Notes under the pieces: model-generated
The model's input: the letters and a program-made list of their open reading frames with translations, nothing else
The model's database searches: none
Told to the model about the DNA's origin: nothing
Shown: piece by piece, positions 3,933 through 64,000 of the stretch
How positions within the stretch are numbered: the stretch's first letter is position 1
How the letters are laid out: each line of letters opens with the position of its first letter
Assembly: GCF_963921235.1 (NCBI RefSeq)
Contig: NC_086110.1
Location: forward strand, 13,144,001-13,208,000
Origin: Mobula hypostoma
Lineage: Eukaryota
Direction: 5' to 3'
DNA length: 64,000 nucleotides
Position numbers and translations under genes: made by a program

Positions 3933-6853
3933 GTACAAAGTTCATTTATGAATGTTATTCCTCTTCCCTATTCTGTCCTAGGTAGTGTGAATCTAAGTGC
4001 GTTCGAATGGACATTGTTTTTTTCTAAAATTTATAATTTTAATTCTTACTTTTCCTTGTAAATTTTCCAGATGGGCTTCGACCGAAAATGTTATGCCAGA
4101 AGAATACTTTAATGGGTATTATTATTAATATGATTAGTATTATATAAGTACCATAGTTGCCAGCTCATGCGGATATCCAGGTATCCCGTGCCGAGTGATC
4201 AGGGACAGTTCCTGCGAACAATTGACGTTGCCATTGCAGTACTCTTCAGCCTTTCTACTAACTGATCAATTATATTCCCCGTTGGCATCCGATTTTTATG
4301 TAAAATTCTTTTAAATCTTTGCCTGAACATTGCTGGAAAGCTTAGAGAAGGTTACTGTTGTTGGTCCTGCTTTTCCTAACCTCGTATCAGCAAATTTGCA
4401 CACCAATCTTCCATAAGTTAAGTACTCCCTTTCAAATAATCTATTTGCACGATGGTAGTTTGTCTGGATATTTTCACTTTCCAGATGCATCTTTTAAGCA
4501 AACTCCCGTTCTTGAAGTGTTCCTCATGATTTGATCGGAGGAACAGCAATTTTGGTAGCTGCAATATTAAGCTAAAATTCACAGCGGTAAGAATAGTACT
4601 CAGACTCCTCCTACTGGCATTGCATGGAGTAGACGGGTTACTCGAAGGGCTCCGGTTTTTTTTTAAATTACTGAATCCAATCTGCTTTGAAATACTTACT
4701 TTTGGAATATTATGATGTCTCGTGCTGAAACTTCAAAAATAAGAAGATCCCTCTGTGACTATGTAAACTATTGCGGAGTTAATTTGGAAAGCTCGGAACT
4801 CTTGTTTAGCTCTTTGGAATAATATTTAGTCTATCAACTCCAGAATTTTAAATGTTTATTTTTGCTTCATCTAACCTTGTTCCCTCAGTTTGACTAATTA
4901 ATTCGTTGCAATTGTGTAGTTTATTTGTTTATTACTTTTCTCTTTGAACAGTTCTTTTTCTCCGATATATTTTCATAAATAATTCTTCTTTTTCTTCTCT
5001 TTCTTATTTTTTCTGTTTAGGAAATTTATAGACTTAACTTCAGTAACTTTTCTTTGTAATTATTTTTTGCAAATATTATGATTTGATTTTTTTTGGTTCT
5101 TTTGAAGGTTGCTTGCCTTGGTCACATTTTTAACCGTCCTATTAATATACTGTCGCATCTGTGAATACCAGTAAAAGTCTTGTTTTTCTGATAAGTGTTT
5201 CTCTTTGAGCATTTGAAAACGGAACAGTGTTCTTTCTTTCATTATATTGTAAATAGCTGTTATTCCTTTAGCTGTACGGACCTTAAATCGAGAATCCAGT
5301 TTATTCGGTGTAAAATCGGAGTCATATGCACACTTATAAGATCTGCAATGTCTCTCTTTAGTTTATATTCTTTTTTAATAGTTTTCCATATTTTAAGAGT
5401 CAATTTCACCTACGGGTTGTCAATATTATCCATGCAACCTTGTAGGTTATTATCAGCCAAAATTGCCTGTATGAGGATGGAAAGTATCCTCTACTCAATG
5501 TTTTTCCATTGAGCGTCATATGTTGGGTTGCACCAGCATATCACAGCTCTCAACTGTGCTGCAAAATAATAATCTTTAAGAGAGGGTAAGCCCCATATCC
5601 TCTCTTCCTTGGCTAATTGCAAAGTTTTGAGACGAACTCTAAGCCTTTTACATTGCCATATATATTTTGATAGCATCTTGGCCCATTCATTGAATTGATT
5701 TTGTTAATCTCTATTCGCAGGGTCTGAAGCAGATATAGTAGTCTGGGCAGTATATTAATTTTAATAGATTCAATCCTTCAACTGAGACCAAGAAAAGGAA
5801 TTAGTTTCCATCCTGTAAAACCTTCCTTTTATATATATATATATATAGATCAAAATGTCATTTGCATAACAGGCCAATTTAAGCTCTGTCTGTTTAATTG
5901 TGATTCCCCTGATATCTTCACTTTGTCTGATGGTTCCCGATATAATGCGAAGAGTAGCGGTGACCATGTACAACACTGTCTCGTGCCCCTTTCTAGGTTA
6001 ACACTATTCGATAAATATCCGTCGATTTTAATCCTGGCGTTAGGATTGTCGTATAGTGCCTGTGTAGTTTTAATAACTGTGTCATGTAGACAAAATGCAT
6101 GTAAAACTCTGTAAAGAAAATTCCAATTAATTGAATCAAATGCCTTTTCAGCATCCAGGCTTATCACTATTGCTTCAATTTCATTTTTTTTATATGATCC
6201 ATAATGTGAAGGGCCCTTCGTATTTTGTCTTGTGCTTGGCATTGTTGTATAAAACCTGACTGATCATTATGTATCAGTGTGGGTAGGAACTCTTCTTATC
6301 GTTTGGCCAGGATGGAGGTAAATATTCTATAATCCACATTAAGAACAGACATTGGTCTAAATGACTCATTTTCCATTTTATACTTGCCTTCTTTCGGTAT
6401 AGCTGAGATTATCACCACCTTCAAGCTGGGTAGCATTTGCGCCTTTCTTAGGGCCACGTTCAGTGTGGGGAGTAAAACAGGAATTAATTAACCTTTAAAC
6501 CCTTTATTCCAGTCTGTCGTATATCCATCTGATCCTGGTGACTTGCTTAATTTAAGCCTTCTAATTGTAGTTCTCAGTTCAGCTTCAGTTATGTCAGCAG
6601 TCATCGTTCTATTTTGTTCTTTGCTTAAAGTGGGTAACTCAAAAGAATCCAGAAAGGTGTAATTTTGGGTTATGCTTCCCCCTGGAGCTTTGGAATATGG
6701 AGTTTCGTAAAACATTTCAAATCTTCTTGTATTTAATTTAGCTTACTTTTTTTTTATCATATTTGTTCTTGGATCCCTAATTCATTGAATTGTATTTTCT
6801 GCTATCATTTGCTTTCAGTTTCCGCGCCAGTATTTTCATAGATTTAGATCCAC
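3933..6853 (-). mobile_element. L1-clade LINE fragments (ORF2 RT and downstream part 6853-5040; a 5'/ORF1-type piece about 4620-3940)
   Basis: Translations ISLDAEKAFDSINW, RGTRQCCTWSPLLFAL, LACYANDILI, LPSLKDYYFAAQL. The sequence is the reverse complement of parts of the L1 copy at 42200-49137 (e.g. 4561-4595 vs 42221-42260). Many stops and frameshifts. Confidence 0.85.
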
Positions 6854-9800
6854 TGTCATGGTTCGGTCCATGATGTCTGCATTTCGGTTCACGGTCCGGT
6901 CCGTGGACTCAGGACTCCGTGTCTTCCAGCTGTCCCTTGTTTTGGTTGAGTTAAGCATAGGCACCTGATTCCCATCTTGAGGCTTGGGATATAAGTAGCC
7001 TTGGGGTCGAGTGCGGGCTGTCGGTTTGTCTTGTCAAGATTTCCTGGGAGCAACCTACCGGCTTGGGTGGCCACTTGCCATCTTTGGGCGGCACTGGAGA
7101 ACTATCGCTTCATAGAGCCTTGCTGTCGGTAGTTGCATATGTCTTTGCGGTATAGATTCGGCAGTTTCCCGGGCCAGCTGAGTGGCCCTCAGCCACTCCG
7201 AGCCAGGTAGGGATCCGGCTGTTTCCGTAGCTAGCCGAGGTTACTGTCCGTAACTGCGACTCGGAGCAACCCCGATGCGGAAATGGAACTGCCTGTCGTT
7301 CTTAGATGTTTGTCTGCTCTTGTCCTTGCCTCCGTGGTGTAAGCCAGGCCGTTCTGCCGTCGCCCTGCGGGGTATCTGTCTTGTCTTGTCCTTGCCTCCG
7401 TGGGGTATGTCAGGCCGTTCTGCCGGTGTCCTGTGGTGGGATCCGTCTTGTCTTCTCTTTGCCTCTGTTGCGTAAGTCAGACCGTTCTGCCGTTACCCGA
7501 ACGAGGGACCTTTCCCACCTTGGTGTGGAGTTGAAGTTGAGTCCCTGCTTGTCTAAGTATAAGTCCTGGCTCTATGTCTATTTTCTGTCCAGTATCATGT
7601 TGGTGTCGTGTTAAAGATGACTCCCGGCTTTTCGAAGGATAAGTCCCTGCTCTATGTTGATGTACAGTTCCCAGCCTGACTTCAAGCTCAAGCCTCGAGA
7701 CCCCAGAGAGTCTCCAAGCTCAAGCCTCAAGACCCCAGCCTGCCTCCAGGCTCAAGCCTCGAGACCCCAGACTGTCTCTAAGTTCAAGCCTCGAGACCCC
7801 AGCCTGCCTCCAGGCTCAAGCCTCGAGACCCCAGACTGTCTCTAAGTTCAAGCCTCGAGACCGCAGCCTGCCTGCAGGCTCAAGCCTCGAGTCCCCAGCC
7901 TGCCTGCAGGCTCAAGCCTCGAGACCCCAGCCTGCCTCAAGGCTCAAGCCTCGAGACCCCAGCCTGCCTGCAGGCTCAAGCCTCGAGACTCCAGCCTGCC
8001 TGCAGGCTCAAGCCTCGAGACCCCAGCCTGCCTCCAGGCTCAAGCCACGAGACCCCAGCCTGCCTGCAGGCTCAAGCATCGAGACTCAAGCCTGCCTGCA
8101 GGCTCAAGGCTCGAGACCCCAGACTGCCTGCAGGCTCAAGCCTCGAGACCCCAGCCTGCCTGCAGGCTCAAGCCTCGAGACCCCAGCCTGCCTCAAGGCT
8201 CAAGCCTCGAGACCCCAGCCTGCCTGCAGGCTCAGGCCTCGAGACTCCAGCCTGCCTGCAGGCTCAAGCCTCGAGACCCCAGCCTGCCTCCAGGCTCAAG
8301 CCTCGAGGCCCCAGCCTGCCCCCAGGCTCAAGCCTCGAGACCCCAGCCTGCCCGCAGGCTCAAGCCTCGAGACCCCAGCCTGCCTGCAGGCTCAAGCCTC
8401 GAGACCCCAGCCTGCCTGCAGGCTCAAGCCTCGAGACCCCAGCCTGCCTGCAGGCTCAAGCCTCGAGACCCCAGCCTGCCTGCAGGCTCAAGGCTCGAGA
8501 CCCCAGCCTGCCTGCAGGCTCAAGCCTCGAGACCCCAGCCTGCCTGCAGGCTCAAGCCTCGAGACCACAGCCTGCCTGCAGGCTCAAGACTCGAGACCAC
8601 AGCCTGCCTCCAGGCTCAGACCTCGAGACCGCAGCCTGCCTCCAGGCTCAAGCCTCGAGACCCCAGCCTGCCTCCAGGCTCAAGCCTCGAGACCCCAGCC
8701 TGCATCCAGGCTCAGGCCTCGAGTTCCCAGCCTGCCTCCAGGCTGAGGCCTCGAGACCCCAGCCTGCCTCCAGGCTCAAGCCTCGAGAACCCAGCCTGCC
8801 TCTGGGCTGAAGCCTCGACACCCCAGCCTGCCTCTAAGTTCAAGCCTGGAGACCGCAGCCTTCCTGCAGGCTCAAGCCTCGAGTCCCCAGCCTGCCTGCA
8901 GGCTCAGGCCTCGAGGCCCCAGCCTGCCTCCAGGCTAAAGCCTCGAGTCCACAGCCTGCCTGCAGGCTCAAGCCTCCAGACCCTAGCCTGCCTCCAGGCT
9001 CAAGCCTCGAGACCCCAGCCTTCCTGCAGGCTCAAGCCTCGAGACTCCAGCCTGCCTCCAGGCTCAAGCCTCGAGACCCAAGCCTGCCTGCATGCTCAAG
9101 CCTCGAGACCCCAGCCTGCCTGCAGGATCAAGCCTCGAGACCCCAGCCTGCCTGCAGGCTCAAGCCTCGAGACCCCAGCCTGCCTGCAGGCTCAAGCCTC
9201 GAGACCCCAGCCTGCCTGCAGGCTCAAGCCTCGAGACCCCAGCCTGCCTGCAGGCTCAAGCCTCGAGATCCCAGCCTGCCTGCAGGCTCAAGCCTCGAGA
9301 CCCCAGCCTGCCTGCAGGCTCAAGCCTCGAGACCCCAGCCTGCCTGCAGGCTCAAGCCTCGAGACCCCAGCCTGCCTCCAGGCTCAAGCCTCGTGACCCC
9401 AGCCTGCCTGCAGGCTCAAGCCTCGAGAACCCAGCCTGCCTCGAGGCTCAAGCCTCGAGACCCCAGCCTGCCTCCAGGCTCAGGCCTCGAGACCCCTGCC
9501 TGCCTCCAGGCTCATGCCTCGAGACCCCAGCCTGCCTGCAGACTCAAGCCTCGAGACCCCAGCCTGCCTCCAGGCTCAAGCCTCGAGACCCCAGCCTGCC
9601 TGCAGGCTCAAGGCTCGAGACCCCAGCCTGCCTGCAGGCTCAAGCCTCGAGACCCCAGCCTGCCTCCAGGCTCAAGCCTCGAGGCCCCAGCCTGCCCCCA
9701 GGCTCAAGCCTCGAGACCCCAGCCTGCCTGCAGGCTCAAGCCTCGAGACCCCAGCCTGCCTGCAGGCTCAAGCCTCGAGACCCCAGCCTGCCTGCAGGCT

Positions 9801-12800
9801 CAAGCCTCGAGACCCCAGCCTGCCTGCAGGCTCAAGCCTCGAGACCCCAGCCTGCCTGCAGGCTCAAGCCTCGAGACCCCAGCCTGCCTCCAGGCTCAGG
9901 CGTCGAGACCCCAGCCTGCCTCCAGGCTCAAGCCTCGAGACCACAGCCTGCCTCCAAGCTCAGGCCTCGAGACCGCAGCCTGCCTCCAAGCTCAGGCCTC
10001 GAGACCGCAGCCTTCCTCCAGGCTCAAGCCTCGAGACCCCAGCCTGCCTCCAGGCTCAGGCCTCGAGACGCCAGCCTGCCTCCAGGCTCAAGCCTCGAGA
10101 CCCCAGCCTGCATCCAGGCTCAGGCCTTTCCCAGCCTGCCTCCAGGCTGAGGCCTCGAGACCCCAGTCTGCCTCCAGGCTCAAGCCTCGAGAACCCAGCC
10201 TGCCTCTGGGCTGAAGCCTCGAGAACCCAGCCTGCCTCTAAGTTCAATCCTCGAGACCGCAGCCTTCCTGCAGGCTCAAGCCTCGAGTCCCCAGCCTGCC
10301 TGCATGCTCAAGCCTCGAGTCCCCAGCCTGCCTCCAGGCTAAAGCCTCGAGTCCCCAGCCTGCCTGCAGGCTCAAGCCTCGAGACCACAGCCTGCCTCCA
10401 GGCTCAGACCTCGAGACCGCAGCCTGCCTCCAGGCTCAGGCCTCGAGACCCCAGCCTGCCTCCAGGCTCAAGCCTCGAGACCCCAGCCTGCATCCAGGCT
10501 CAGGCCTCGAGTTCCCAGCCTGCCTCCAGGCTGAGGCCTCGAGACCCCAGCCTGCCTCCAGGCTCAAGCCTCGAGAACCCAGCCTGCCTCTGGGCTGAAG
10601 CCTCGAGACCCCAGCCTGCCTCTAAGTTCAAGCCTCGAGACCGCAGCCTTCCTGCAGGCTCAAGCCTCGAGTCCCCAGCCTGCCTGCAGGCTCAAGCCTC
10701 GAGTCCCCAGCCTGCCTCCAGGCTAAAGCCTCGAGTCCCCAGCCTGCCTGCAGGCTCAAGCCTCGAGACCCTAGCCTGCCTCCAGGCTCAAGCCTCGAGA
10801 CCCCAGCCTTCCTGCAGGCTCAAGCCTCGAGACTCCAGCCTGCCTCCAGGCTCAAGCCTCGAGACCCCAGCCTGCCTGCATGCTCAAGCCTCGAGACCCC
10901 AGCCTGCCTGCAGGATCAAGCCTCGAGACCCCAGCCTGCCTGCAGGCTCAAGCCTCGAGACCCCAGCCTGCCTGCAGGCTCAAGCCTCGAGACCCCAGCC
11001 TGCCTGCAGGCTCAAGCCTCGAGACCCCAGCCTGCCTGCAGGCTCAAGCCTCGAGACCCCAGCCTGCCTGCAGGCTCAAGCCTCGAGACCCCAGCCTGCC
11101 TGCAGGCTCAAGCCTCGAGACCCCAGCCTGCCTGCAGGCTCAAGCCTCGAGACCCCAGCCTGCCTCCAGGCTCAAGCCTCGTGACCCCAGCCTGCCTGCA
11201 GGCTCAAGCCTCGAGACCCCAGCCTGCCTCGAGGCTCAAGCCTCGAGTCCCCAGCCTGCCTCCAGGCTCAGGCCTCGAGACCCCTGCCTGCCTCCAGGCT
11301 CATGCCTCGAGACCCCAGCCTGCCTGCAGACTCAAGCCTCGAGACCCCAGCCTGCCTCCAGGCTCAAGCCTCGAGACCCCAGCCTGCCTGCAGGCTCAAG
11401 CCTCGAGACCCCAGCCTGCCTCCAGGCTCAAGCCTCGAGACCCCAGCCTGCCTCCAGGCTCAAGCCTCGAGACCCCAGCCTGCCTGCAGGCTCAAGCCTC
11501 GAGACCCCAGCCTGCCTGCAGGCTCAAGCCTCGAGACCCCAGCCTGCCTGCAGGCTCAAGCCTCGAGACCCCAGCCTGCCTGCAGGCTCAAGCCTCGAGA
11601 CCCCAGCCTGCCTGCAGGCTCAAGCCTCGAGACCCCAGCCTGCCTCCAGGCTCAAGCCTCGAGACCCCAGCCTGCCTCCAGGCTCAAGCCTCGAGACCCC
11701 AGCCTGCCTCCAGGCTCAAGCCTCGAGACCCCAGCCTGCCTGCAGGCTCAAGCCTCGAGACCCCAGCCTGCCTCCAGGCTCAAGCCTCGAGACCCCAGCC
11801 TGCCTCCAGGCTCAAGCCTCGAGACCCCAGCCTGCCTCCAGGCTCAGGCCTCGAGACCCCAGCCTGCCTCCAGGCTCAAGCCTCGAGACCCCAGCCTGCC
11901 TCCAGGCTCAAGCCTCGAGACCCCAGCCTGCCTGCAGGCTCAAGCCTCGAGTCCCCAGCCTGCCTGCAGGCTCAAGCCTCGAGACCCCAGCCTGCCTCCA
12001 GGCTCAAGCCTCGAGACCCCAGCCTGCCTGCAGGCTCAAGCCTCGAGACCCCAGCCTGCCTGCAGGCTCAAGCCTCGAGACCCCAGCCTGCCTGCAGGCT
12101 CAAGCCTCGAGACCCCAGCCTGCCTCAGGCTCAAGCCTCGAGACCCCAGCCTGCCTGCAGGCTCAAGCCTCGAGACCCCAGCCTGCCTGCAGCTCAAGCC
12201 CTCCAGCCTGCCTCCAGGCTCAAGCCTCGAGACCCCAGCCTGCCTGCAGGCTCAAGCCTCGAGACCCCAGCCTGCCTCCAGGCTCAAGCCTCGAGACCCC
12301 AGCCTGCCTGCAGGCTCAAGCCTCGAGACCCCAGCCTGCCTCCAGGCTCAAGCCTCGAGACCCCAGCCTGCCTCCAGGCTCAGGCCTCGAGACCCCAGCC
12401 TGCCTCCAGGCTCAAGCCTCGAGACCCCAGCCTGCCTCCAGGCTCAGGCCTCGAGACCCCAGCCTGCCTCCAGGCTCAAGCCTCGAGACCCCAGCCTGCC
12501 TCCAGGCTCAGGCCTCGAGACCCCAGCCTGCCTCCAGGCTCAAGCCTCGAGACCCCAGCCTGCCTGCAGGCTCAAGCCTCGAGACCCCAGCCTGCCTGCA
12601 GGCTCAAGCCTCGAGACCCCAGCCTGCCTGCAGGCTCAAGCCTCGAGACCCCAGCCTGCCTGCAGGCTCAAGCCTCGAGACCCCAGCCTGCCTCCAGGCT
12701 CAAGCCTCGAGACCCCAGCCTGCCTGCAGGCTCAAGCCTCGAGACCCCAGCCTGCCTCCAGGCTCAGGCCTCGAGACCCCAGCCTGCCTCCAGGCTCAGG

Positions 12801-15800
12801 CCTCGAGTCCCCAGTCTGCCTCCAGGCTCAGTCCTCGAGACCCCAGCCTGTCTCCAGGCTCACGCCTCGAGACCCCAGCCTGCCTCCAGGCTCAGTCCTC
12901 GAGACCCCAGCCTGCCTCCAGGCTCAAGCCTCGAGACCCCAGCCTGCCTGCAGGCTCAAGCCTCGAGACCCCAGCCTGCCTGCAGGCTCAAGCCTCGAGA
13001 CCCCAGCCTGCCTGCAGGCTCAAGCCTCGAGACCCCAGCCTGCCTCCAGGCTCAAGCCTCGAGACCCCAGCCTGCCTGCAGGCTCAAGCCTCGAGACCCC
13101 AGCCTGCCTGCAGGCTCAAGCCTCGAGACCCCAGCCTGCCTCCAGGCTCAAGCCTCGAGACCCCAGCCTGCCTGCAGGCTCAAGCCTCGAGACCACAGCC
13201 TGCCTCCAGGCTCAAGCCTCGGACCCCAGCCTGCCTCCGGCTCAGCCTGCCAGGCTCAAGCCTCGAGCCTCACCCCAGCAGCCTGCCTCAGCTAGCCTCG
13301 AGCCCCAGCCTGCCTCAGGCTCAGGCCTCGAGACCCCAGCCTGCCTCCAGCTCAAGCCTCGAGACCCCAGCCTGCCTCCAGGCTCAAGCCTCGAGACCCC
13401 AGCCTGCCTCCAGGCTCAGGCCTCGAGCCCCAGCCTGCCTCCAGGCTCAGGCCCCCGAGACCCCAGCCTCCCTCCAGGCTCAAGCCTCGAGAGTCCTCAG
13501 AGACTCGAACCCAGCCTGCCTGCAGGCTCAAGCCTCGAGACCCCAGCCTGCCTGCAGGCTCAAGCCTCGAGACCCCAGCCTGCCTCCAGGCTCAAGCCTC
13601 GAGACCCCAGCCTGCCTGCAGGCTCAAGCCTCGAGACCCCAGCCTGCCTCCAGGCTCAGGCCTCGAGACCCCAGCCTGCCTGCAGGCTCAAGCCTCGAGA
13701 CCCCAGCCTGCCTCCAGGCTCAGGCCTCGAGACCCCAGCCTGCCTCCAGGCTCAGGCCTCGAGACCCCAGCCTGCCTCCAGGCTCAAGCCTCGAGACCCC
13801 AGCCTGCCTCCAGGCTCAAGCCTCGAGACCCCAGCCTGCCTCCAGGCTCAAGCCTCGAGACCCCAGCCTGCCTCCAGGCTCAAGCCTCGAGACCCCAGCC
13901 TGCCTCCAGGCTCAAGCCTCGAGACCCCAGCCTGCCTCCAGGCTCACGCCTCGAGACCCCAGCCTGCCTGCAGGCTCAAGCCTCGAGACCACAGCCTGCC
14001 TCCAGGCTCAAGCCTCGAGCCCCAGCCTGCCTCCAGGCTCAAGCCTCGAGTCCCCAGCCTGCCTCCAGGCTCAAGCCTCGAGACCCCAGCCTGCCTCCAG
14101 GCTCAGCCTCGAGACCCCAGCCTGCCTCCAGGCTCAAGCCTCGAGACCCCAGCCTGCCTCCAGGCTCAAGCCTCGAGACCCCAGCCTGCCTCCAGGCTCA
14201 AGCCTCGAGACCCCAGCCTGCCTCCAGGCTCAAGCCTCGAGACCCCAGCCTGCCTGCAGGCTCAAGCCTCGAGACCCCAGCCTGCCTGCAGGCTCAAGCC
14301 TCGAGACCCCAGCCTGCCTGCAGGCTCAAGCCTCGAGACCCCAGCCTGCCTGCAGGCTCAAGCCTCGAGACCCCAGCCTGCCTGCAGGCTCAAGCCTCGA
14401 GACCCCAGCCTGCCTGCAGGCTCAAGCCTCGAGACCCCAGCCTGCCTCCAGGCTCAAGCCTCGAGACCCCAGCCTGCCTGCAGGCTCAAGCCTCGAGACC
14501 CCAGCCTGCCTCCAGGCTCAAGCCTCGAGACCCCAGCCTGCCTCCAGGCTCAAGCCTCGAGACCCCAGCCTGCCTCCAGGCTCAAGCCTCGAGACCCCAG
14601 CCTGCCTCCAGGCTCAGGCCTCGAGACCCCAGCCTGCCTCCAGGCTCAGGCCTCGAGACCCCAGCCTGCCTCCAGGCTCAAGCCTCGAGACCCCAGCCTG
14701 CCTCCAGGCTCAAGCCTCGAGACCCCAGCCTGCCTGCAGGCTCAAGCCTCGAGACCCCAGCCTGCCACAAGGCTCAAGCCTCGAGACCCCAGCCTGCCTG
14801 CAGGCTCAAGCCTCGATACCCCAGCCTGCCTCTAGGCTCAGGCCTTGAGACCCCAGCCTGCCTGCAGGCTCAAGCCTCGAGTCCCCAGCCTGCCTCTAGG
14901 CTCAGGCCTCGAGACCCCAGCCTGCCTGCAGGCTCAAGCCTCGAGTCCCCAGCCTGCCTCCAGGCTCAGGCCTCGAGACCCCAGCCTGCCTCCAGGCTCA
15001 AGCCTCGAGACCCCAGCCTGCCTCCAGGCTCAAGCCTCGAGACCCCAGCCTGCCTCCAGGCTCAAGCCTCGAGACCCCAGCCTGCCTCCAGGCTCAAGCC
15101 TCGAGACCCCAGCCTGCCTCCAGGCTCAGCCTCGAGACCCCAGCCTGCCTCCAGGCTCAAGCCTCGAGACCCCAGCCTGCCTGCAGGCTCAAGCCTCGAG
15201 ACCCCAGCCTGCCTGCAGGCTCAAGCCTCGAGACCCCAGCCTGCCTGCAGGCTCAAGCCTCGAGACCCCAGCCTGCCTGCAGGCTCAAGCCTCGAGACCC
15301 CAGCCTGCCTGCAGGCTCAAGCCTCGAGACCCCAGCCTGCCTCCAGGCTCAAGCCTCGAGACCCCAGCCTGCCTCCAGGCTCAGGCCTCGAGACCCCAGC
15401 CTGCCTCCAGGCTCAAGCCTCGAGACCCCAGCCTGCCTCCAGGCTCAAGCCTCGAGACCCCAGCCTGCCTCCAGGCTCAAGCCTCGAGACCCCAGCCTGC
15501 CTCCAGGCTCAAGCCTCGAGACCCCAGCCTGCCTCCAGGCTCAAGCCTCGAGACCCCAGCCTGCCTCCAGGCTCAAGCCTCGAGACCCCAGCCTGCCTCC
15601 AGGCTCAAGCCTCGAGACCCCAGCCTGCCTCCAGGCTCAAGCCTCGAGACCCCAGCCTGCCTGCAGGCTCAAGCCTCGAGACCCCAGCCTGCCTCCAGGC
15701 TCAAGCCTCGAGACCCCAGCCTGCCTCCAGGCTCAAGCCTCGAGACCCCAGCCTGCCTCCAGGCTCAAGCCTCGAGACCCCAGCCTGCCTCCAGGCTCAG

Positions 15801-17574
15801 CCTCGAGACCCCAGCCTGCCTCCAGGCTCAAGCCTCGAGACCCCAGCCTGCCTGCAGGCTCAAGCCTCGAGACCCCAGCCTGCCTCCAGGCTCAAGCCTC
15901 GAGACCCCAGCCTGCCTGCAGGCTCAAGCCTCGAGACCCCAGCCTGCCTCAAGCCTCGAGACCCCAGCCTGCCTGCAGGCTCAAGCCTCGAGAGCCTGCC
16001 CCAGCCTGCCTCCAGGCTCAAGCCTCGAGACCCCAGCCTGCCTGCAGGCTCAAGCCTCGAGACCCCAGCCTGCCTCCAGGCTCAAGCCTCGAGACCCCAG
16101 CCTGCCTGCAGGCTCAAGCCTCGAGACCCCAGCCTGCCTCCAGGCTCAAGCCTCGAGACCCCAGCCTGCCTCCAGGCTCAAGCCTCGAGACCCCAGCCTG
16201 CCTCCAGGCTCAAGCCTCGAGACCCCAGCCTGCCTGCAGGCTCAAGCCTCGAGACCCCAGCCTGCCTGCAGGCTCAAGCCTCGAGACCCCAGCCTGCCTC
16301 CAGGCTAAGCCTCGAGACCCCAGCCTGCCTGCAGGCTCAAGCCTCGAGACCCCAGCCTGCCTCCAGGCTCAAGCCTCGAGACCCCAGCCTGCCTCCAGGC
16401 TCAAGCCTCGAGACCCAGCCGCCCAGGCTCAAGCCTCGAGACCCCAGCCTGCCTGCAGGCTCAAGCCTCGAGACCCCAGCCTGCCTGCAGGCTCAAGCCT
16501 CGAGACCCCAGCCTGCCTGCAGGCTCAAGCCTCGAGACCCCAGCCTGCCTGCAGGCTCAAGCCTCGAGACCCCAGCCTGCCTGCAGGCTCAAGCCTCGAG
16601 ACCCCAGCCTGCCTCCAGGCTCAAGCCTCGAGACCCCAGCCTGCCTCCAGGCTCAAGCCTCGAGACCCCAGCCTGCCTCCAGGCTCAGCCTCGAGACCCC
16701 AGCCTGCCTCCAGGCTCAAGCCTCGAGACCCCAGCCTGCCTCCAGGCTCAAGCCTCGAGACCCCAGCCTGCCTCCAGGCTCAAGCCTCGAGACCCCAGCC
16801 TGCCTCCAGGCTCAAGCCTCGAGACCCCAGCCTGCCTCCAGGCTCAAGCCTCGAGACCCCAGCCTGCCTCCAGGCTCAAGCCTCGAGACCCCAGCCTGCC
16901 TGCAGGCTCAAGCCTCGAGACCCCAGCCTGCCTGCAGGCTCAAGCCTCGAGACCCCAGCCTGCCTGCAGGCTCAAGCCTCGAGACCCCAGCCTGCCTGCA
17001 GGCTCAAGCCTCGAAACCCCAGCCTGCCTCCAGGCTCAAGCCTCGAGACCCCAGCCTGCCTCCAGGCTCAAGCCTCGAGACCCCAGCCTGCCTGCAGGCT
17101 CAAGCCTCGAGACCCCAGCCTGCCTCAAGGCTCAGGCCTCGAGACCCCAGCCTGCCTCCAGGCTCAAGCCTCGAGACCCCAGCCTGCCTCCAGGCTCAAG
17201 CCTCGAGACCCCAGCCTGCCTCTCAAGCCTCGAGACCCCAGCCTGCCTCCAGGCTCAAGCCTCGAGACCCCAGCCTGCCTGCAGGCTCAAGCCTCGAGAC
17301 CCCAGCCTGCCTCAAGGCTCAGGCCTCAAACCCCAGCCTCCAGTCCTTTAGTCATGTTATGTCCTTGCCTGGTTCTGGGACCCGAGCACAAGGCAAGACC
17401 CAGGTTCAGGGTCCTTGTCCAGTCTCTGGCTCGGGGTCCAGGCCCAACTCTGCGTTCTTGTCCCTGCTCCTTGTCTGTATTCTGTCACGTCACTACTCTA
17501 GTCAAGTCATGTTCCCTGTACTTCAGTGTCTGTGTCTTGAATTTGGGTCCGCTACCAGAGCCTCCATTGTGACA
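6854..17574 (+). mobile_element. Solo LTR-like insertion (about 1.05 kb of LTR sequence plus an internal 9.7-kb tandem array) with a 5-bp target-site duplication
   Basis: Starts TGTCATGG (6854) and ends TTGTGACA (17574). TCCAC lies immediately outside both ends (6849-6853 and 17575-17579). Removing the block rejoins the L1 ORF2 reading ...KQRYYESGSKSMKI..., matching 44900-44950 in the other L1 copy. Confidence 0.88.
7669..17340. repeat. 32-bp tandem repeat (satellite/large minisatellite), about 300 copies; consensus CCCCAGCCTGCCT(G/C)CAGGCTCAAGCCTCGAGA
   Basis: Directly visible. The period of 32 gives the 32-aa (96-bp) periodicity in all three + frames of the ORF track. Edge units are degenerate (7669-7860, 17310-17340). 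Confidence 0.98.
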
Positions 17575-18395
17575 TCCACTTTCATAGTATCTCTGTTTCA
17601 GAAACATTATTTTTATTCTAATGACTTGTGTAACCAAACTATTAACTTTATTCCTAATTTTTAAAATTTCCTGTGGTGTATCCTCTGCCAAACTCAATTC
17701 GTGTTTTTTACTAGTTCCATCAGCTTATTTTGTAATTCCTCTAATGTTTTATTTTTTTTTCTTAGATGAAGATAACGCTATAATTTTCCCTCTTAAGATA
17801 GCCTTTAGAATATCCCATAGAATGGGAGGTGAAACATCTCCATTATCATCGAATTCTAAGTAAAGACCGATCTCTTTTTTTAATTTGTTCCTTAAAATAT
17901 GAATCTTTGAGTTGACTTGAATTTAGTTTCCAAATAATATTCTTTGGTTGTAGGTCAAAATCAGCATACAAATATATAGGTGCATGGTCACTTACATCTA
18001 TTGTCCCAATTCCACAGGTGACTATTTTCACTCTATTTTTTCCAAACGTTATGAAATAGCCTGTTCTTTTATATACGGAATGGGGGGCAATGGGGGGAAT
18101 GGGGGGAATGAGTCTAATCCCTTCTGTCGGGAATAAGGTCCCTCCATATATCAATTAGACTAACATCCTCAAAAACAGTGTTAACTTTCTTATGTAAGGA
18201 TTTTGTGTCATAAGGTTTTAGATTGGAAGAGTCCAACTTTGGTTGAAATTGTAAATTTAAGTCTCCCCCACATATCACGAGGCCTTCTGTTTCTGTTACA
18301 ATAACATTAGTAATTTTCTGGAAGAAACTAATATCACTTCCTGGGGGTGCGAGTATATTCAATAAAATAACTGGATTTCCATCTATATTCCGATG
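17575..18395 (-). mobile_element. L1-clade ORF2 endonuclease region, continuation of the L1 interrupted by the 6854-17574 insertion
   Basis: Translations GNPVILLNILAPPGSDISFFQKI, LVICGGDLN, IDVSDHAPI, IWKLNSSQLKD. Homologous to 44130-44930. Confidence 0.88.
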
Positions 18396-18399
18396 GTAG

Positions 18400-20367
18400 T
18401 GACAGGTTTTGCACTGATTACAGAAAGGTGAATGCGAGAACAAAAACAGGTGGTTATTCCATCCGTAAAGTGGATGATTGTGTAGACAAGGTTGGAAAAA
18501 TGAGTTTCTTACAAAGATCGATCTGTTAAAAGGGTATTGATATTTTCTATTAACGGATAGAGGTAAAAACATTTCTGCATTTGTAACGCCTTCTGGGTTG
18601 TATAAATACAATGTTCTGCCATTTGGAATGAAAAATGTTCCGGGAAAGTGCCTATATTGATGATTTTGTCACAGGCAATGATACCTGGGAAGCCTATGTC
18701 TCTGCAGTGGAAAAGCTGTTTGACAGGCTCTCAAAGGCTAACCTTACAGTCAACGTAGCTAAGAGTGAATTTGGCCATGCCACTGTGACCTATCTTGCTT
18801 ATGTTGTAGGTCGAGACAGGTTGGCTCCCGTTCAGGCAAAAGTTCAGGCAATTTCTGAGGTTCCCATTCCAACCGGTAAAAAAAGTTATTAGAAGATTCC
18901 TGGGAATGGTCGGATATTATTGGAAGTTCTGTTAGAACCATGCTGATATTGCTCCCCCATTGATTAATCTCCTGAAGAAGGGTGAAAAGTTTGTTTGGAC
19001 AGAGCCTTGTCAGGAGGCATTTGATAAATTGAAAGCCATCTTCTGTCACCAAACTGGACTCTGGTCACCTGACATAGCCGTAGATGCCAGTGATGAAGCT
19101 ATAGGAGCAGTGTTACTGCAAAGGGATGATTATGATGATGTTGACCATCCTGTGGCTTACTTTTCAAAGAAATTCAATTAGCATCTAATAAATTATTCTA
19201 CCATCGAGAGGGAATTATTATCACTTATTTTAGCTTTGTAGCATTTTGATGTGTATGTTTGCCCAGCTCAGAGACCACGTGTGGTTTATACAGATCATAA
19301 TCCATTGGTGTTCTTGAGTAAGGTGAAAAACAAAAATAGACGGTTGTTGAATTGGAGTTTGATTTTGCAGGAGTATGACCTCCTGATAACTCACATTAAA
19401 GGCAAGGATAATATAAATGCCGATTGTCTTTCCAGATGTTAAGTTTGCGATGTACTTTTAATAGTGGAGTGGATTTACTATTTGTATACGCTTCTGTAAT
19501 ATGTTATATTAATCTGTAGTATGCTATATGGTAACCGTGAATGTGTTTCACATATTGTAGTTTCCCTTTTTGGCAGCAGGTATTACGTGCCCACGGTTTT
19601 CTTTTACTGTGGGTGTCACTTTAAAACGCCTAGATGAGGCGGGACTATGACGTTAGTACAACAAGCTGCGACAGACCGCTGGGACTTCCGGAAAGAAGGA
19701 AGGAGAGAGACAGAGAGAGAGTGGTAGCTTTGCACAGCAAGCTGCCCGCAGCCGCTTACTGCAACAATGGGTAAAGTCTGATACTTTCCCATGCTCAGAG
19801 GATTGGGTTGATCAGCGGCACACAGTACACATTGGATGTGTGACTGTCACTTCGAATGATCCATACGTGGAATTTGTTGGAGTACACTGTGGCGACCACG
19901 ATGTTAGCCCTTACCTGGTTTCGGGCATGTTATGTGGTAACCACTCGTGCCAGGGAATATTCCGTGACTGTCACCTTGTGATATTTCTACGTGGATTTCG
20001 GGACGACTTGAAGGATAAGATCTTCGGCGACTGTTACTTCGTTTTCCCGGCGTGGAACCTGTGGAATTCTTCGTGATTGCCTCCTCTCAACACTTTAATG
20101 TGGATATCAAAGTTTCTCCCTTCATTTATTCCGTGGATTACTGGACCTTTCTAGTTTACCATCTTAAGAATTTCAGAACTGTTCCCAAGCCTGACAGTTT
20201 GGGAGCCACACATGCAGATAACACTGTTAACTGCTGTTTATTTCGTTAATTTTCTATGTTTTTAGTAGATACTAATAAATATAGTGGTTCTAACATTAAA
20301 ACCTGACTCAATTTGTGTTCTAATGCTGCTGGTAGGTAACACATTCGCAGAGTTTCATGCAGCGACA
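18400..20367 (+). mobile_element. Gypsy (Gmr1-type) RT-RNase H fragment with 3' LTR (about 19581-20367)
   Basis: Fragments FCTDYRKVN, KIDLLKG, LPFGMKN, AYIDDF, DASDEAIGAVLLQ, YTDHNPL, IKGKDNINADCLSRC*. RNase H is the last domain before the LTR. LTR-like segment runs TATTACG...GCAGCGACA. No 5' half is present. Confidence 0.8.
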
Positions 20368-20960
20368 AACCACTTCTTTGACAATGTCGATAAAAACAGG
20401 AACTTTTAATAGCATTTCAACGAGGGCCGGTGGGGACCCATTACCCTAACTCCCACATGACACTATCGACTCAAATTTGTAAATATGTCACAGTTCCCGT
20501 ATTGACGTACAGTTACTGGAAGTCCGAGCCAACAGGATAGCCAAATGCTATCTTCTCAGTCGAACACGACGGAAGTATTAAATTTTGCCTCATGAGGTAC
20601 TAACTTTATTTGTTGTTATTTGACTTAAGTTACATACTGCATTACCATGAAACTTTACACTGAATTCAATACCCCTATTATCGGTTTCCCTGTGGGTTGG
20701 AGCACAATTCAGTGAGTGTTTATTAGATGCCAATATCACTTATTTGTTGTTTTCTTTTTATATTACCATCGAGCCACCGAATTATTTGGCCGGAAATAAA
20801 AAGAAGCTGCTCGATGAATGCAATGGGCCATACAATGTGTGTGAATTGTCAACGATTTGCGATCGAGACTCGGGATTAGAGTGTAGAGGCAAGATACTCA
20901 ATAAATACATGAGAGAAGGAGGTGCGTGACCGAAGCTGTCCGTTGATGGCGGGCCCAAAT

Positions 20961-23510
20961 GTAAGACACAGACACTGAAGGACAGGACTTGACTAGATTA
21001 GGGACGTGACAGGATACAGACAAGGAGCAGGGACAAGAACGCAGACTTGGGCAAGGACATGGACAAGACAGGGAACCCGGACAAGGAACTCTGTAATCCT
21101 AAATGGAGAAGGAATGAGCATATCTGGTGTATTGATCCGTGATGACCAAGACATTTGCAGTGTTACTGGAATCAGGCTCTATGGAGAGGAATTCCATATA
21201 CACGAAGTCAAATGGTCCAGTTCTTTGTAAATGAGATAGTGGCAACGTCTAATAGACGTCTATTAGGCAGCATCTTCCTCCGAATACATTGGATGCACGA
21301 CGTCAGGCTTCACTCGTGTCCAATAAAACCGATCTTCGACCAATCCGTAGTTCTTGTGAAATCCCAAATGACCTGAAGTGACTTCAGTACAATCTTCGGA
21401 TACTTTTTTCAGGGAACGCCGAAGTCTATCTGGGGGAGATGGAAAACTGCGTGAATCTTTGTTCCTCAACTCCAGTTTTTCATAATTCTTCATGGGTAGG
21501 GGTATGGCAGGGTATTTTGTCTTCAAAAATGGGTTCATAACCGCTCTGACAACAGATGACCAGATGGCACCTTTACAAGGATCGACTTCCTGAGCTGCTA
21601 CCAATTCCGAAGTACCCAAGTAGGCAGCGTCTTCGTATTTTGCGCGGTGAAGTTGCAATATGCTTGGGGAATGGCATGGCCCGAAGTTGGCAAATAATCA
21701 ACAGCTCTGTCAGGCTAACGTCTGTGCTCTGATTTCCCAGCTGTGGAAAACTAGCGTATTGCTTTAACACCAGAGGCAGGAACGTCCTCCCACTCTCAGT
21801 CTGTTGCCGGCACTTCAGGAGAACTTCGTGACAACGCACCCGCATCATTGCTCACTTCCAGGCCGATATGCAAGGGAAAAATCATAAGCAGACAACGCCG
21901 CCAACCAGCGATGACCTGTAGCATCCAATTTCGCCGAAGTGAGAATATAAATCATTGGATTATTGTTGGTCATCACCTAGGATTTGGCACCAGATAGTAA
22001 CTTAATTTACCCACCACTTCCCACTTCAATGTCAGAAACTCCAATTTGTGTGCAGGGTAGTTTCGTTCGTTTGGTGTCAGACAGCAGCTAACGAAACCGA
22101 AAGCCCGTTTATCTTGCTATGGAACACTGCCTAATCCATCACGGCTGGCGTCTGTGTGCAACAAATACGGTAACTGCTGCTTTGCAAAGGCAGGCAAGGG
22201 TGATTTAGTCAATAACTCTACAGTGGCTAAAATGCCTCTTCACACTTTGCATCCCATCTTTCCTCCAAAGGCTCCGAATAGCGAAGATAAACCTTGCCTT
22301 CTCTGCCTTTGTTCCATACCTTCTTCACTCAGGGAGGGTATCCACACAGAAGTTCATTCAGTTGATGGATTGCTCTGGAGTGGCCCTTCAGAAATCTCCG
22401 GTAGTACCCACAGAATCCAAGGAATGAACGTACGGCCCTCATATTCTTGGGCCTTGGCCATGTGGTTCCCGCCTGGACCTCCGACGAATCCGTAGCCGCT
22501 CCATCCGAGGCGACTATGTGAATGCCATTGTTAACTGTCATCTTAAGAACAGGAACTTGTCCAGTGAGAGTGTTTACCCTTCCGCTTTCAGGCGGTCTGA
22601 CACATAAATCGTCACGTCTCATGCTGCTCCAATGTTGATCCAAACAAGATGAGATTATGCAAGTAAACCAGTGCATCAAGCAGCATTCATGTCCCCGTGA
22701 CACGTTATAAAGTAGCCGATGCTCCTGATACCATTTTATCTTTCCACTGCACTCATGGGTATTTGAGAATGCCCGCTTGTTGGATCCAACACACTGAACT
22801 GTTTGGCTCCACTAAGGCAGACGAGAGTAACCTCGATCCGTGGAACAGGACGGCTGTTCAGTGTTTGATAATCAACACATATTCGTACTTTCCCATTCTT
22901 CCTCCTCACCGCCACCATAGACGACGCATATGGAAAGTTCGAATGTTCGGTCTGAGGGAACGGAAATTATGGAGAATGCTGTATCAATACTGCCCTATCC
23001 AAATTTATTGTTCGCCAGGAAATAACAGACCTTCCACCGGCATAAAATTAAAGTGGCAGCATATTTGCAGATATTTCAACATTGACGAACAGTTACTAGA
23101 AAGATAAAGAAAAGGGGCCCAATTACATTGAAACTAGACAAAACGTGAGCTGGAGCTCATTTCTGGATAGTCGGTACTCACAGCGCTAAACCCACGTCCC
23201 CAGCCACAGTTCGGACTTCCCTTGAAGACTTTTACAAACGAACTGGCAAACTCAGAAGCATTTCCACTTCCTCCCTGGACCCATTCGTTTCCTTGAGCGT
23301 TTTCCCTTGTGCTCCTCTGTGCACCTTCTTCCACTTCCCACATCTACCAGCAAACCGAAAAATAACCCATTGTCCCTCAGAAATCCGATCGCACCCAGCT
23401 CTCTCGAATGTTCCGAGGCATCCCACTAAGCCAAATCTGTCTGGATGACGCAACATTCCTAAACCAACCAAACGGCCCCTTATTTTAGCAGACACCAAAA
23501 CACTGCTCTA
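20961..23510 (-). mobile_element. Heavily degenerate Gypsy LTR retrotransposon of a second lineage (RT, then integrase)
   Basis: Minus ORF fragments VAVRRKNGKVRICVDYQTLN (RT), RAVRSFLGFCGYYRRF (RT/RH junction), GHLGFHKNYGLVEDRFYW (integrase zinc finger), in canonical Gypsy order. LTR-like piece at about 20961-21095. Confidence 0.75.
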
Positions 23511-25872: not shown

Positions 25873-26733
25873 TGTTACGTACCCCGTAACTGGGTTGCCA
25901 AACCAGCAGAAATGGATCACTCGGTTGGAGTCTGGTTTACTAGAACTAAGAAAGTTTTATTAAAGAAACAAGCAACACAGTAATCGAAAGGATAATAAAT
26001 GCAACAGTTCAGTAATGATAAATACACATGTGCACAGAATTAAGATAACAGCATCAATCAAGCTCTATCGTTGTCCAGGGATAATGACCAATTTCAAAGT
26101 GACACAAAGTTCAGTCCAATTTAGTAGTTCAGTTCGCAGTAATCGTTGCCATGGCAATGGACAACGTGGGGGGAGAGAGAGAGGGAACAGGAACAACTGA
26201 TCATTCAGACACGGCTTCACTCACAGACCGGCGATAAGGCTCACAAGCAGCTTTTGGGCAGGTCCTTGGTGATGTCACCTGAGGTCACCAACTGTGACCC
26301 CTCCTCCAGATGCGGTCGATCCTCTGCAGTGAACCCGGCACCCAGGCAAGGGCGGACACACACCGGGTTCCCGCTGATCGTACCTTTCCACCCTGGCTGT
26401 TGTCTGGTACTGCCCACCGACTCGTGAGAGGCGTACCGCTTCCAGGGTCTCTTTACCTCGGGTGGCGTGTGTGTGTCCTGCCTTAGCGAACCGGTCCCTT
26501 TTTATCCCCCTGCTGGGGTATCGCCTGTCCATCACTTCAAACAGTTCAAGGTTCAAAGGGGGGAGCCGCTCCAGACAGCTCTCTCTCCCCCGTCCCTTCA
26601 TTACAGATCTCCAGACGCTGCTCCATTGTTCCTTATCTCTCCTTCCCCTGGGGACAGGTGGCAGACCACTTGCTGATGTCACTGATGCTAACCCAGGCCA
26701 GCAAACATCTTAATTTTATGTGTATTCGTCACA
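25873..26733 (-). repeat. 3' LTR (861 bp)
   Basis: Near-identical direct repeat of 29893-30753 with scattered substitutions; preceded on the minus strand by the polypurine tract. Confidence 0.95.
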
Positions 26734-29892: not shown

Positions 29893-30753
29893 TGTTACGT
29901 ACCCCGTAACTGGGTTGCCAAACCAGCAGAAATGGATCACTCAGTTGGAGTCTAGTTTACTAGAACTAAGAAAGTTTTATTAAAGAAACAAGCAACACAG
30001 TAATCGAAAGGATAATAAATGCCACAGTTCAGTAATGATAAACAAACATGTGCACAGAATTAAGATAACAGCATCAATCAAGCTCTATCGTTGTCCAGGG
30101 ATAAATGACCAATTTCAAAGTGACACAAAGTTCAGTCAAATTTAGTAGTTCAGTTCGCAGTAATCGTTGCCATGGCAATGGACAACGTGGGGGGAGAGAG
30201 AGAGGGAACAGGAACAACTGATCATTCAGACACGGCTTCACCACCTTGCGGCGATATGGCTCACAAGCAGCTTTTGGGCAGGTCCTTGGTGATGTCACCT
30301 GAGGTCACCGACTGTGACCCCTCCTCCAGATGCGGTCGATCTTCTGCAGTGAACCCGGCACTCAGGCAAGGGCGGACACACACCGGGTTCCCGCTGATCG
30401 TACCTTTCCACCCTGGCCGTTGTCTGATACTTCCCACCGACTCGTGAGAGGAGTACCGCTTCCAGGGTCTCGTTACCTCCGGTGGCGTGTGTGTGTCCTG
30501 CCTTAGCGAACCGGTCCCTTTTTATCCCCCTGCTGGGGTATCGCCTGTTCATCACTTCAAACAGTTCAAGGTTCAAAGGGGGGAGCCGCTCCAGACAGCT
30601 GTCTCTCCCCCATCCCTTCATTACACATCTCCAGATGCTGCTCTATTGTTCCTTATCTCTCCTTCCCCTGGGGACAGGTGGCAGACCATTTGCTGATGTC
30701 ACTGATGCTAACCCAGGCCAGCAAACATCTTAATTTTATGTGCATTCGTCACA
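29893..30753 (-). repeat. 5' LTR (861 bp)
   Basis: Direct repeat of 25873-26733; followed on the minus strand by the PBS. Confidence 0.95.
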
Positions 30754-46474: not shown

Positions 46475-46591
46475 ACCGAAAGAAGGCAAGGATAAAATGG
46501 AATTTGCGTCATTTGGACCAATATCTTTCCTTAATGTGGATTACAGAATATTTTCCTCCGTCATGGCCAAACGATTAGAAGAGTTTCTACC

Positions 46592-46775
46592 AGTTCATTG
46601 GCTATATTTAAGAGGGAGTTAGATATGGCCCTTGTGGCTAAAGGGATCAGGTGGTATGGAGCGAAGGCAGGGACAGGGTTCTGAGTTGGATGATCAGATA
46701 TGATCATGCTGAATGGCGGTGCAGGCTCGAAAGCCCGAATGGCCTATTCATGCACCTATTTTCTATGTTTCTACC
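46592..46775 (+). mobile_element. Short CR1 3'-end insertion in the L1 RT, flanked by an 8-bp duplication
   Basis: Similar to 46283-46474. TTTCTACC at 46584-46591 and 46768-46775. The L1 reading (LEEFLP|TLINNDQTGFI) resumes after it. Confidence 0.85.
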
Positions 46776-63821: not shown

Positions 63822-64000
63822 GTAAGATAGTGTCTTGATGAAGTCATGATGTTGGATCTCGGCCTTAAACGTCGACATTTTAGATCTGCCTGATCGGCTG
63901 AATTCCTCCATTTTATGTGTTATTCTGAATTTCAGCATGTCCAGAATCTTCTGTGCTCAATGTAAATGGAAGTCTTTACAAGTCATAGTTTGTGGGTTAA

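What the first reader, a model, noticed from the sequence alone, without database searches (positions are those of the whole stretch)
6854..17574. A 9.7-kb satellite array grown inside a solo LTR that is itself inserted in an L1 ORF2
Seen: TG...CA ends, exact TCCAC duplication on both sides, the L1 frame resuming after removal, and about 300 copies of a 32-bp unit occupying 90% of the block with degenerate units at both edges. Inference: a short tandem repeat native to this LTR family expanded in place after insertion. That would give a dated, bounded example of satellite birth from a TE, with the pre-insertion state recoverable from sister L1 copies.
Basis: partly seen in the sequence, partly recalled or inferred. 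Interest (0 to 1): 0.75.

Follow-up and report, generated by a model that had tools for sequence, protein, structure and literature searches.

The report
Minisatellite blown up inside a solo LTR
One copy of a common 1-kb LTR-type mobile element, inserted into a dead L1 in a ray genome, has grown to 10.7 kb because its own short 32-base repeat multiplied to about 300 copies in place; this is a clean example of an already known process.

Summary
A TG...CA element (6854-17574) with a 5-bp duplication (TCCAC) splits a decayed minus-strand L1 ORF2. A sister L1 in the same window and sister-L1 contigs from four public runs read straight through the empty site. About 303 copies of a 32-bp unit (7670-17339) make up 90% of the insert.

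- The 5' part of the element is a high-copy dispersed family in at least three coded organisms. Its 5' end falls exactly at 6854.
- Family contigs run on into the first four 32-bp units, so the repeat is native to the family.
- Words of the homogenised array are 100 to 1000 times rarer than LTR words, so long arrays are not the family norm.
- The array grew in phases. It has a variant-rich 5' third containing a 1.79-kb tandem block duplication (97.8% identical). Its 3' two-thirds are almost uniform.

Not shown: that the element is an LTR of a full-length retroelement, the family's 3' end, or the assembled array length. No run demonstrably covers this locus.

The scan has already found the same kind of event elsewhere in this genome (s1-141961, s1-142412). 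The process is known from plants (PMC7004042) and reviews (PMC12628747). This is a new member of a known kind, of modest interest.

The parts
5112..6853 (-). Left part of the host L1: ORF2 reverse-transcriptase region and downstream, decayed with many stops
   Evidence: RVT_1 hit at 5853-6263(-), E 3.3e-10. The best solved-structure matches are human LINE-1 ORF2p, E about 1e-12. It is 82-86% identical to the sister L1 at 44919-48197.
6849..6853 (.). Target-site duplication, left copy (TCCAC)
   Evidence: The sister L1 carries this 5-mer once.
6854..7669 (+). 5' part of the LTR-type element. It starts TGTCA and holds a 66-bp repeat x2.7 (7311-7493) and an 80-bp-spaced duplicate (7520-7577 / 7600-7657).
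   Evidence: In each of four runs, 34-69 contigs with unrelated flanks end exactly at 6854, and word depth over this part is 10^4-10^5.
7670..7797 (+). Four native, mutually divergent 32-bp units shared with the family. Unit 3 (7734-7765) already has the canonical sequence.
   Evidence: Family-level contig depth continues through 7811.
7798..7861 (+). Exact 64-bp (two-unit) duplicate of 7734-7797, the first visible step of growth
7670..17339 (+). The whole 32-bp tandem array, about 303 units. Two main variants differ at one base: ..CCTGCAGG in 85 units and ..CCTCCAGG in 80.
8354..10130 (+). First copy of a 1788-bp (56-unit) tandem block duplication inside the array
   Evidence: At an offset of 1788 there are 35 mismatches in 1586 nt, i.e. 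97.8% identity.
10142..11918 (+). Second copy of the 1788-bp block
11919..17300 (+). Young, nearly uniform part of the array, with 0-0.4 differences per unit from the consensus apart from the C/G variant site
   Evidence: The two variants are clustered: 96 runs against 123 +/- 8 expected.
17340..17574 (+). 3' part of the LTR-type element, ending TGACA
   Evidence: Part of it (17436-17552) recurs at 85% identity at 21058-20949.
17575..17579 (.). Target-site duplication, right copy (TCCAC)
17575..18668 (-). Right part of the host L1: the stretch between endonuclease and RT, and the endonuclease region of ORF2
   Evidence: 80% identical to the sister L1 at 44121-44933. The translation is continuous with the left part.

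Best explanation
An old L1 was hit, between the endonuclease and reverse-transcriptase parts of ORF2, by an integrase-type insertion of an LTR-type element about 1.05-1.25 kb long. What remains has no internal region or second repeat and is most simply read as a solo LTR.

The family natively carries a short, variable run of about four to six 32-bp units, next to other internal repeats of 66 bp and about 80 bp. At this one copy the run expanded to about 300 units through repeated out-of-register DNA events: replication slippage and unequal sister-chromatid or homologue exchange.

Growth was stepwise. First came a two-unit (64-bp) duplication. Then an array built up that diversified and underwent a 1.79-kb block duplication. 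Last came a recent amplification or homogenisation that produced the near-uniform 3' two-thirds.

Shown: the insertion structure, the empty site, the dispersed family, the native units, the rarity of the homogenised array, and the internal duplications. Inferred: the molecular mechanism of growth, the LTR identity, and neutrality (no function).
For: - Termini, TSD and frame continuity.
- Empty site in a sister L1 in the window. Sister-L1 contigs also read through the site; the loose end at 6859 matches window 17586 onward at 28 of 30 letters.
- L1 identity.
- Family: 34-69 contigs per run have unrelated flanks abutting 6854. Depth is 10^4-10^5 over 6888-7811 in organisms A and B and lower in C. 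Most laid contigs are 90-95% like this copy.
- Rarity of the array: depth is 0-1192 beyond 7812, although canonical 31-mers occur 90-172 times in this array alone.
- Variable unit number among family copies: 'goes back' joints at 7734-7737.
- Stepwise growth.
- Clustering of variants: p about 0.0002.
- Dyad symmetry in the unit: folding z-scores of -2.2 to -3.3, a modest aid to slippage.
Against: - No full-length element with two such LTRs, a PBS or a PPT was seen.
- There is no canonical AATAAA signal, only TATAAG at 6990 and 7558.
- The family's 3' end and the sequence that follows the native units in ordinary copies were not observed, because only one reads call was allowed.
- The runs may be of related species rather than the window's own. 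Many private L1 letters of this locus have no support in them. The rarity of the array is therefore shown for relatives' genomes, not directly for this assembly.
- Contig depths are rough. X1 and X2 come from the same sample yet differ up to ten-fold in array bins.
- The array length rests on the assembly alone.
Confidence: 0.78

Rival explanations
1. The array was already long in the source element and was inserted as a 10.7-kb LTR, so expansion predates insertion.
For: Nothing direct. Family copies do vary in unit number (joints).
Against: Words of the homogenised array are 100 to 1000 times rarer than LTR words in all four runs. The array shows its own local history after the native units: a 64-bp duplicate, a 1.79-kb block duplicate, and a young homogeneous part. 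A retroelement with two 10-kb LTRs would be extraordinary (general knowledge).
Confidence: 0.04
2. The array was imported into the LTR's short repeat from another locus of the same satellite. The route could be ectopic recombination, gene conversion, or re-insertion of a rolling-circle-amplified extrachromosomal circle.
For: The homogeneous 3' two-thirds contrast sharply with the older 5' third. In run X1 canonical-word depth reaches 1192, so at least one array of similar size exists in that organism.
Against: - The canonical unit is already one of the native units, at 7734-7765.
- Phase runs on from the native units into the array without a break, and the same unit continues to the 3' edge despite scattered odd-length units inside.
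- There is no higher-order periodicity of the kind rolling-circle copying of a multi-unit circle would leave.
- Total depth of canonical words is no more than about one array's worth.
Confidence: 0.07
3. The array is real, but its length or internal layout, such as the 1.79-kb block duplicate, is an assembly artefact.
For: No run demonstrably covers the locus, and no spanning read was available. Tandem arrays are prone to mis-assembly.
Against: The window has no N. The two 1.79-kb blocks differ at 35 positions. There are 49 distinct unit variants in a non-periodic order. These features are typical of a resolved long-read assembly, not of a collapsed or stuttered one.
Confidence: 0.12
4. The element is not an LTR but another kind of dispersed non-autonomous element that happens to end in TG..CA. 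The expansion story is otherwise unchanged.
For: No paired copy, PBS, PPT or polyadenylation signal was seen. The flanks before 6854 in family copies show no common purine tract; consensus agreement is only about 0.35.
Against: TG..CA ends with a 5-nt terminal inverted repeat, an exact 5-bp TSD, a length of about 1 kb and several internal direct repeats fit integrase-made LTR insertions (general knowledge). A 110-bp relative of the 3' part lies beside an integrase fragment, in the same orientation.
Confidence: 0.15

Closest known systems
Satellites born from short tandem arrays inside plant LTR retrotransposons (Ogre/Tat elements of Lathyrus and pea; Vondrak et al. 2020, PMC7004042; Macas et al. 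2009, as cited in PMC12628747)
   Same: A short repeat native to a dispersed LTR-element family occasionally expands at single copies into long arrays still embedded in element sequence.
   Different: There the repeat lies in the 3' untranslated internal region of full-length elements, and expansions cluster in centromeric regions and reach high genomic abundance. Here the repeat lies inside the terminal repeat itself, in what looks like a solo copy. The host is a cartilaginous fish, and only about one array's worth exists.
[quoted passage not shown]
   Same: The proposed mechanism is the same: internal tandem motifs of a TE serve as substrate for unequal exchange.
   Different: None in principle. 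This locus adds exact boundaries (TSD, empty site) and visible intermediate steps.
Variable tandem repeats in primate retroelements (the SVA VNTR; U3 repeats of HERV-9/LTR12). Recalled from general knowledge, not checked here.
   Same: Unit number of an internal repeat varies between copies of one family.
   Different: Those usually range over tens of units. A 300-unit, 9.7-kb array within one copy is at the extreme end.
Other TE-born arrays noted by this scan in the same genome (s1-141961, LTR-like element swollen to 19.6 kb; s1-142412, 35-bp array from an LTR-like element's repeat)
   Same: Same genome and the same kind of event: an LTR-like element of about 1 kb whose repeat of about 32-37 bp has grown into a 10-20 kb array.
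   Different: Unit lengths differ: 32 bp here against about 35-37 bp there. I could not test whether the families are related.

Membership tests
Solo LTR of an LTR retrotransposon or endogenous retrovirus | 5'-TG...CA-3' termini with a short terminal inverted repeat | tested here: met
   TGTCA at 6854-6858 and TGACA at 17570-17574.
Solo LTR of an LTR retrotransposon or endogenous retrovirus | Target-site duplication of 4-6 bp with an intact empty site in paralogues | tested here: met
   TCCAC on both sides. A sister L1 and sister-L1 contigs show the 5-mer once, with continuous sequence.
Solo LTR of an LTR retrotransposon or endogenous retrovirus | Many dispersed copies sharing the same termini | tested here: met
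   5' end: 34-69 contigs per run with unrelated flanks end at 6854, and depth is 10^4-10^5.
Solo LTR of an LTR retrotransposon or endogenous retrovirus | Full-length relatives with two such repeats flanking a PBS, gag-pol and a PPT | not testable with these tools
   The window holds only a 110-bp relative of the 3' part, beside an integrase fragment. The rest of the genome could not be searched.
Solo LTR of an LTR retrotransposon or endogenous retrovirus | Promoter and polyadenylation signals (U3-R-U5 layout) | tested here: inconclusive
   TATAAG at 6990 and 7558. No AATAAA, ATTAAA or AGTAAA.
TE-derived satellite formed by expansion of a TE-internal short array | A short array of the same unit is native to the TE family | tested here: met
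   Family contigs cover 7644-7811 at family-level depth, and joints show unit-number variation between copies.
TE-derived satellite formed by expansion of a TE-internal short array | The expanded array is flanked on both sides by sequence of the same TE copy | tested here: met
   6854-7669 and 17340-17574 lie within a single TSD-bounded insert.
TE-derived satellite formed by expansion of a TE-internal short array | Expansion occurs at a minority of copies | tested here: met
   Array-word depth is 0-1192 against LTR depth of 10^4-10^5. These are rough figures from contigs of possibly related species.
Satellite DNA in the strict sense | High genomic abundance, with arrays at several loci | tested here: not met
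   Canonical-word depth corresponds to about one array of this size or less in X1, and far less in X2, X5 and X9. The locus is better called an expanded minisatellite.
L1 (LINE-1) ORF2 as host sequence | Reverse-transcriptase domain most similar to LINE-1 ORF2p, with the endonuclease region upstream on the same strand | tested here: met
   RVT_1 hit, E 3.3e-10. Human LINE-1 ORF2p structures are the top hits. The endonuclease-like translation at 18117-18668(-) was read by eye and gave no Pfam hit.

The most novel reading that the evidence does not exclude
This ray genome may have a lineage-wide propensity for 26-61-bp repeats inside dead mobile elements to blow up into 10-55-kb arrays. The scan has noted at least eight such cases. 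That would point to a peculiar replication, repair or recombination regime, or to a sequence-specific factor acting on GC-rich, dyad-symmetric units. With its exact boundaries, its visible growth steps and a growth front apparently at one end, this locus would then be a datable probe of that process rather than an isolated accident.
Probability: 0.15. Interest if true: 0.6.

Novelty: new member of a known kind. Interest (0 to 1): 0.3.

Why it matters
The locus shows a satellite-like array at birth, with every boundary known:
- the target site in L1, with the empty state preserved in paralogues;
- the element's two ends;
- the family's native four units;
- the first 64-bp duplication;
- a later 1.79-kb block duplication;
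- a young homogeneous front.

That makes it a good teaching or calibration case for models of array growth, and the first steps are datable if the orthologous site is compared across ray species. It changes no concept. The process is documented in plants and reviewed generally, and this scan has already found the same thing elsewhere in this genome.

Tried and rejected
- Word search of the protein collection with the LTR-internal ORF 7306-7611, meant to reach other family copies: 9 candidates, none significant. I did not repeat it with array or junction ORFs. The runs' contigs average about 95 bases, too short to yield comparable ORFs, so a blank would say nothing.
- Exact scans of metagenome contigs with the 32-mer and with a 21-mer from the best-conserved LTR stretch: 0 hits each. 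This was expected and is uninformative.
- Earlier-findings look-ups by sequence with the LTR and with the array: blank.
- Rfam on 6700-7900: only a chance mir-345 match, 22 bits against a threshold of 65.
- A coding reading of the array was rejected. The + strand is stop-free in all three frames, giving ORFs of up to 1322 aa, simply because the unit holds no stop codon. The frames change at indels, and the array lies inside a mobile element inside a dead L1.
- LTR-pair reading (5' part versus 3' part as two LTRs of a small element): no similarity between them.
- High-identity long offsets in the young part (2582-3697 bp) are within what chance gives for a two-state variant pattern. I do not count them as duplications.
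- Copy number of the array in run X1: 1192 divided by a single-copy depth of about 7 gives about 170, against 172 in the window. This is suggestive only, because X2, from the same sample, gives a tenth of that.
Full report
**What is in the sequence.** The block 6854-17574 begins TGTCA and ends TGACA. It is flanked by TCCAC at 6849-6853 and at 17575-17579. Tandem Repeats Finder reports one array at 7670-17339: period 32, 303.2 copies, 93% matches. That is 90% of the block. The unit, allowing up to 3 mismatches, is found 275 times in the window, against none in 100 shuffles. Every listed match lies inside the array on the + strand. The window contains no N.

**The host sequence.** With the block and one copy of the 5-mer removed, the minus strand translates without a break across the join...KIMFLKQRYYESGSKSMKILARKLK....
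- The piece 5853-6263(-) matches Pfam RVT_1 at E 3.3e-10. Its best solved-structure relatives are human LINE-1 ORF2p entries at E about 1e-12.
- The host is therefore a decayed L1 with many stops. The insertion lies between the endonuclease and reverse-transcriptase parts of ORF2.
- A second, + strand copy of the same L1 family lies at 44121-48197, 80-86% identical to the host. In the alignment it reads ...ATGAAAGTAGATCTAAAT... across the site. The host reads ...ATGAAAGTGGA[insert]GTGGATCTAAAT... on that strand.
- In all four public runs, sister-L1 contigs also continue from the site into the sequence that follows 17585 in the window (loose ends at 6859).

The pre-insertion state is thus recovered twice over.

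**The inserted element is a member of a large dispersed family.** I laid Logan contigs of four runs on 6300-8800 at 85% likeness. The runs represent three coded organisms: X1 and X2 are organism A, X5 is B and X9 is C.
- Between 2685 and 7048 contigs lie on the stretch per run.
- In each run, 34-69 contigs with mutually unrelated flanks (consensus agreement about 0.35) end exactly at 6854. That is the behaviour of the terminus of a mobile element.
- Summed word depth over 6888-7811 is 10^4-10^5 in A and B, and roughly ten times lower in C.
- Most laid contigs are 90-95% like this copy.
- At nine listed positions of the 816-bp 5' part, nearly all family contigs differ from the window. In the 554-bp L1 flank the figure is about 26 positions. 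Both are lower bounds, but they fit the nesting order of L1 first, LTR later.
- Joints in the 66-bp repeat region (7311-7493) show that this other internal repeat also varies between copies.

**The 32-bp repeat is native, but the long array is not.** Family-level depth continues across the boundary at 7669 and through the bin 7728-7811.
- The units there are mutually divergent: 7670, 7702, 7734 and 7766. The third already has the canonical sequence.
- 'Goes back' joints at 7734-7737 show family copies with other unit numbers.
- Beyond 7812, depth falls to 0-1192 in X1, at most 248 in X2, at most 263 in X5 and at most 129 in X9.
- Yet the canonical 31-mers occur 90-172 times in this one array.

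If typical copies of a family with thousands of members carried long homogenised arrays, these words would be the deepest of all. They are 100 to 1000 times rarer than LTR words. One caveat concerns where the depth falls. Because 7798-7861 is an exact duplicate of 7734-7797, contigs that fit both may have been placed on the first. The family's collinearity is therefore secure only to 7797.

**How the array is built.** Among 245 cleanly phased units there are 49 variants. Two dominate and differ at one base..CCTGCAGG in 85 units and ..CCTCCAGG in 80.
- After the four native units comes an exact two-unit duplicate.
- The stretch up to about 11900 averages 1.2-1.5 differences per unit in its first 3 kb and then falls off. 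It contains a tandem duplication of a 1788-bp block (8354-10130 and the same at +1788). The two blocks differ at 35 of 1586 positions.
- From about 11900 to the 3' edge, units differ from the consensus by 0-0.4 positions, apart from the C/G site.
- The two variants are clustered: 96 runs against 123 +/- 8 expected, p about 0.0002. Adjacent units are more alike than random pairs, 1.28 against 1.53 differences.
- No higher-order period is visible.
- Only the last 1.5 units or so before 17340 are degenerate.

This pattern is what repeated local out-of-register duplication produces. The events ranged from one or two units to 56 units, spread over a long time, with the most recent activity towards the 3' side.

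**Mechanism.** What follows is inference. The unit has two dyad centres, CTCGAG and AGCCTG..CAGGCT. Three-unit stretches fold as single-stranded DNA somewhat better than shuffles, with z-scores of -2.2 to -3.3. This could favour slippage, but the support is modest. The unit's single CpG is intact in 243 of 245 units, which fits recent homogenisation or low methylation. I see no sign of function. The long + strand ORFs exist only because the unit holds no stop codon. Rfam gives only a chance hit.

**What is not shown.**
- LTR identity. The TG..CA ends, the 5-bp duplication, the length of about 1 kb, the several internal direct repeats and the dispersed family all fit a solo LTR. But no full-length element, PBS, PPT or polyadenylation signal was found. 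The only link to a retroelement is a 110-bp relative of the 3' part at 21058-20949, next to an integrase zinc-finger fragment in the same orientation.
- The family's 3' end. Neither it nor what follows the native units in ordinary copies could be examined, because only one reads call was allowed.
- Coverage of this locus. No run holds more than 0.17 of the sampled words, and many private L1 letters of this locus have no support in the runs. The runs may be of related species. Nothing here verifies the assembled array length, and the rarity of the array is shown in relatives' genomes rather than in this assembly itself.
- Depth figures. Contig depths are rough. X1 and X2 come from one sample yet differ up to ten-fold in array bins.

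**Comparison with what is known.** Expansion of short arrays inside LTR retrotransposons into satellite arrays is documented in Lathyrus, where nine of eleven major satellites arose this way (PMC7004042). A recent review lists it as a general route (PMC12628747). Earlier notes of this scan describe the same kind of event elsewhere in this genome: s1-141961 is a 19.6-kb case and s1-142412 an 11-kb case. Several further TE-born arrays are noted, and one note names the genome as the devil ray Mobula hypostoma. I did not test those notes. By abundance this locus is an expanded minisatellite rather than a satellite in the strict sense.

**Verdict.** This is a new member of a known kind. Its interest is modest and lies mainly in how cleanly it is bounded and how many growth steps remain visible.

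Noticed in passing
window 20949-21058 (-), with 21100-21697 (-): A patch of about 110-150 bp, 85% like the 3' part of the LTR-type element (17436-17552). It sits inside a decayed integrase reading frame, after the H2C2 zinc-finger and the start of the core and before an NGQ-like motif. It seems to replace part of the core. It may be a recombinant or template-switch product.
   Followed up: partly
window 44121-48197 (+): Sister copy of the host L1, 80-86% identical. It is itself interrupted at about 45342-46766 by a LINE reverse-transcriptase fragment. A 97.5% identical twin of that fragment lies at 51633-52764.
   Followed up: partly
window 25873-26733 and 29893-30753: An 862-bp direct repeat pair, 96.5% identical. 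It flanks a minus-strand ORF with a SCAN domain and a CCHC zinc knuckle (27863-29302). This is probably a short Gypsy-type LTR element with both LTRs, of a different family from the one studied.
   Followed up: partly
window 63467-63835 (+): A stop-free stretch with an immunoglobulin C1-set domain (Pfam E 1.2e-12). It may be an exon of an MHC or Ig-type gene at the edge of this otherwise TE-filled window.
   Followed up: no
window 7311-7493: The 66-bp repeat (x2.7) in the same element also varies in copy number among family members. Contig joints skip or repeat 58-136 bases here, so the element carries several unstable internal repeats, of which only one blew up at this locus.
   Followed up: partly
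window 7056-7061: Many family contigs carry about 13-17 extra bases here, and the bin 7056-7139 has ten-fold lower depth. This copy either has a private deletion or belongs to a minor subfamily.
   Followed up: no
window 9092-17569 (+): The array is stop-free in all three + frames, giving mechanical ORFs of up to 1322 aa (10880-14848). A gene caller could mis-annotate these as a proline/serine-rich protein.
   Followed up: yes
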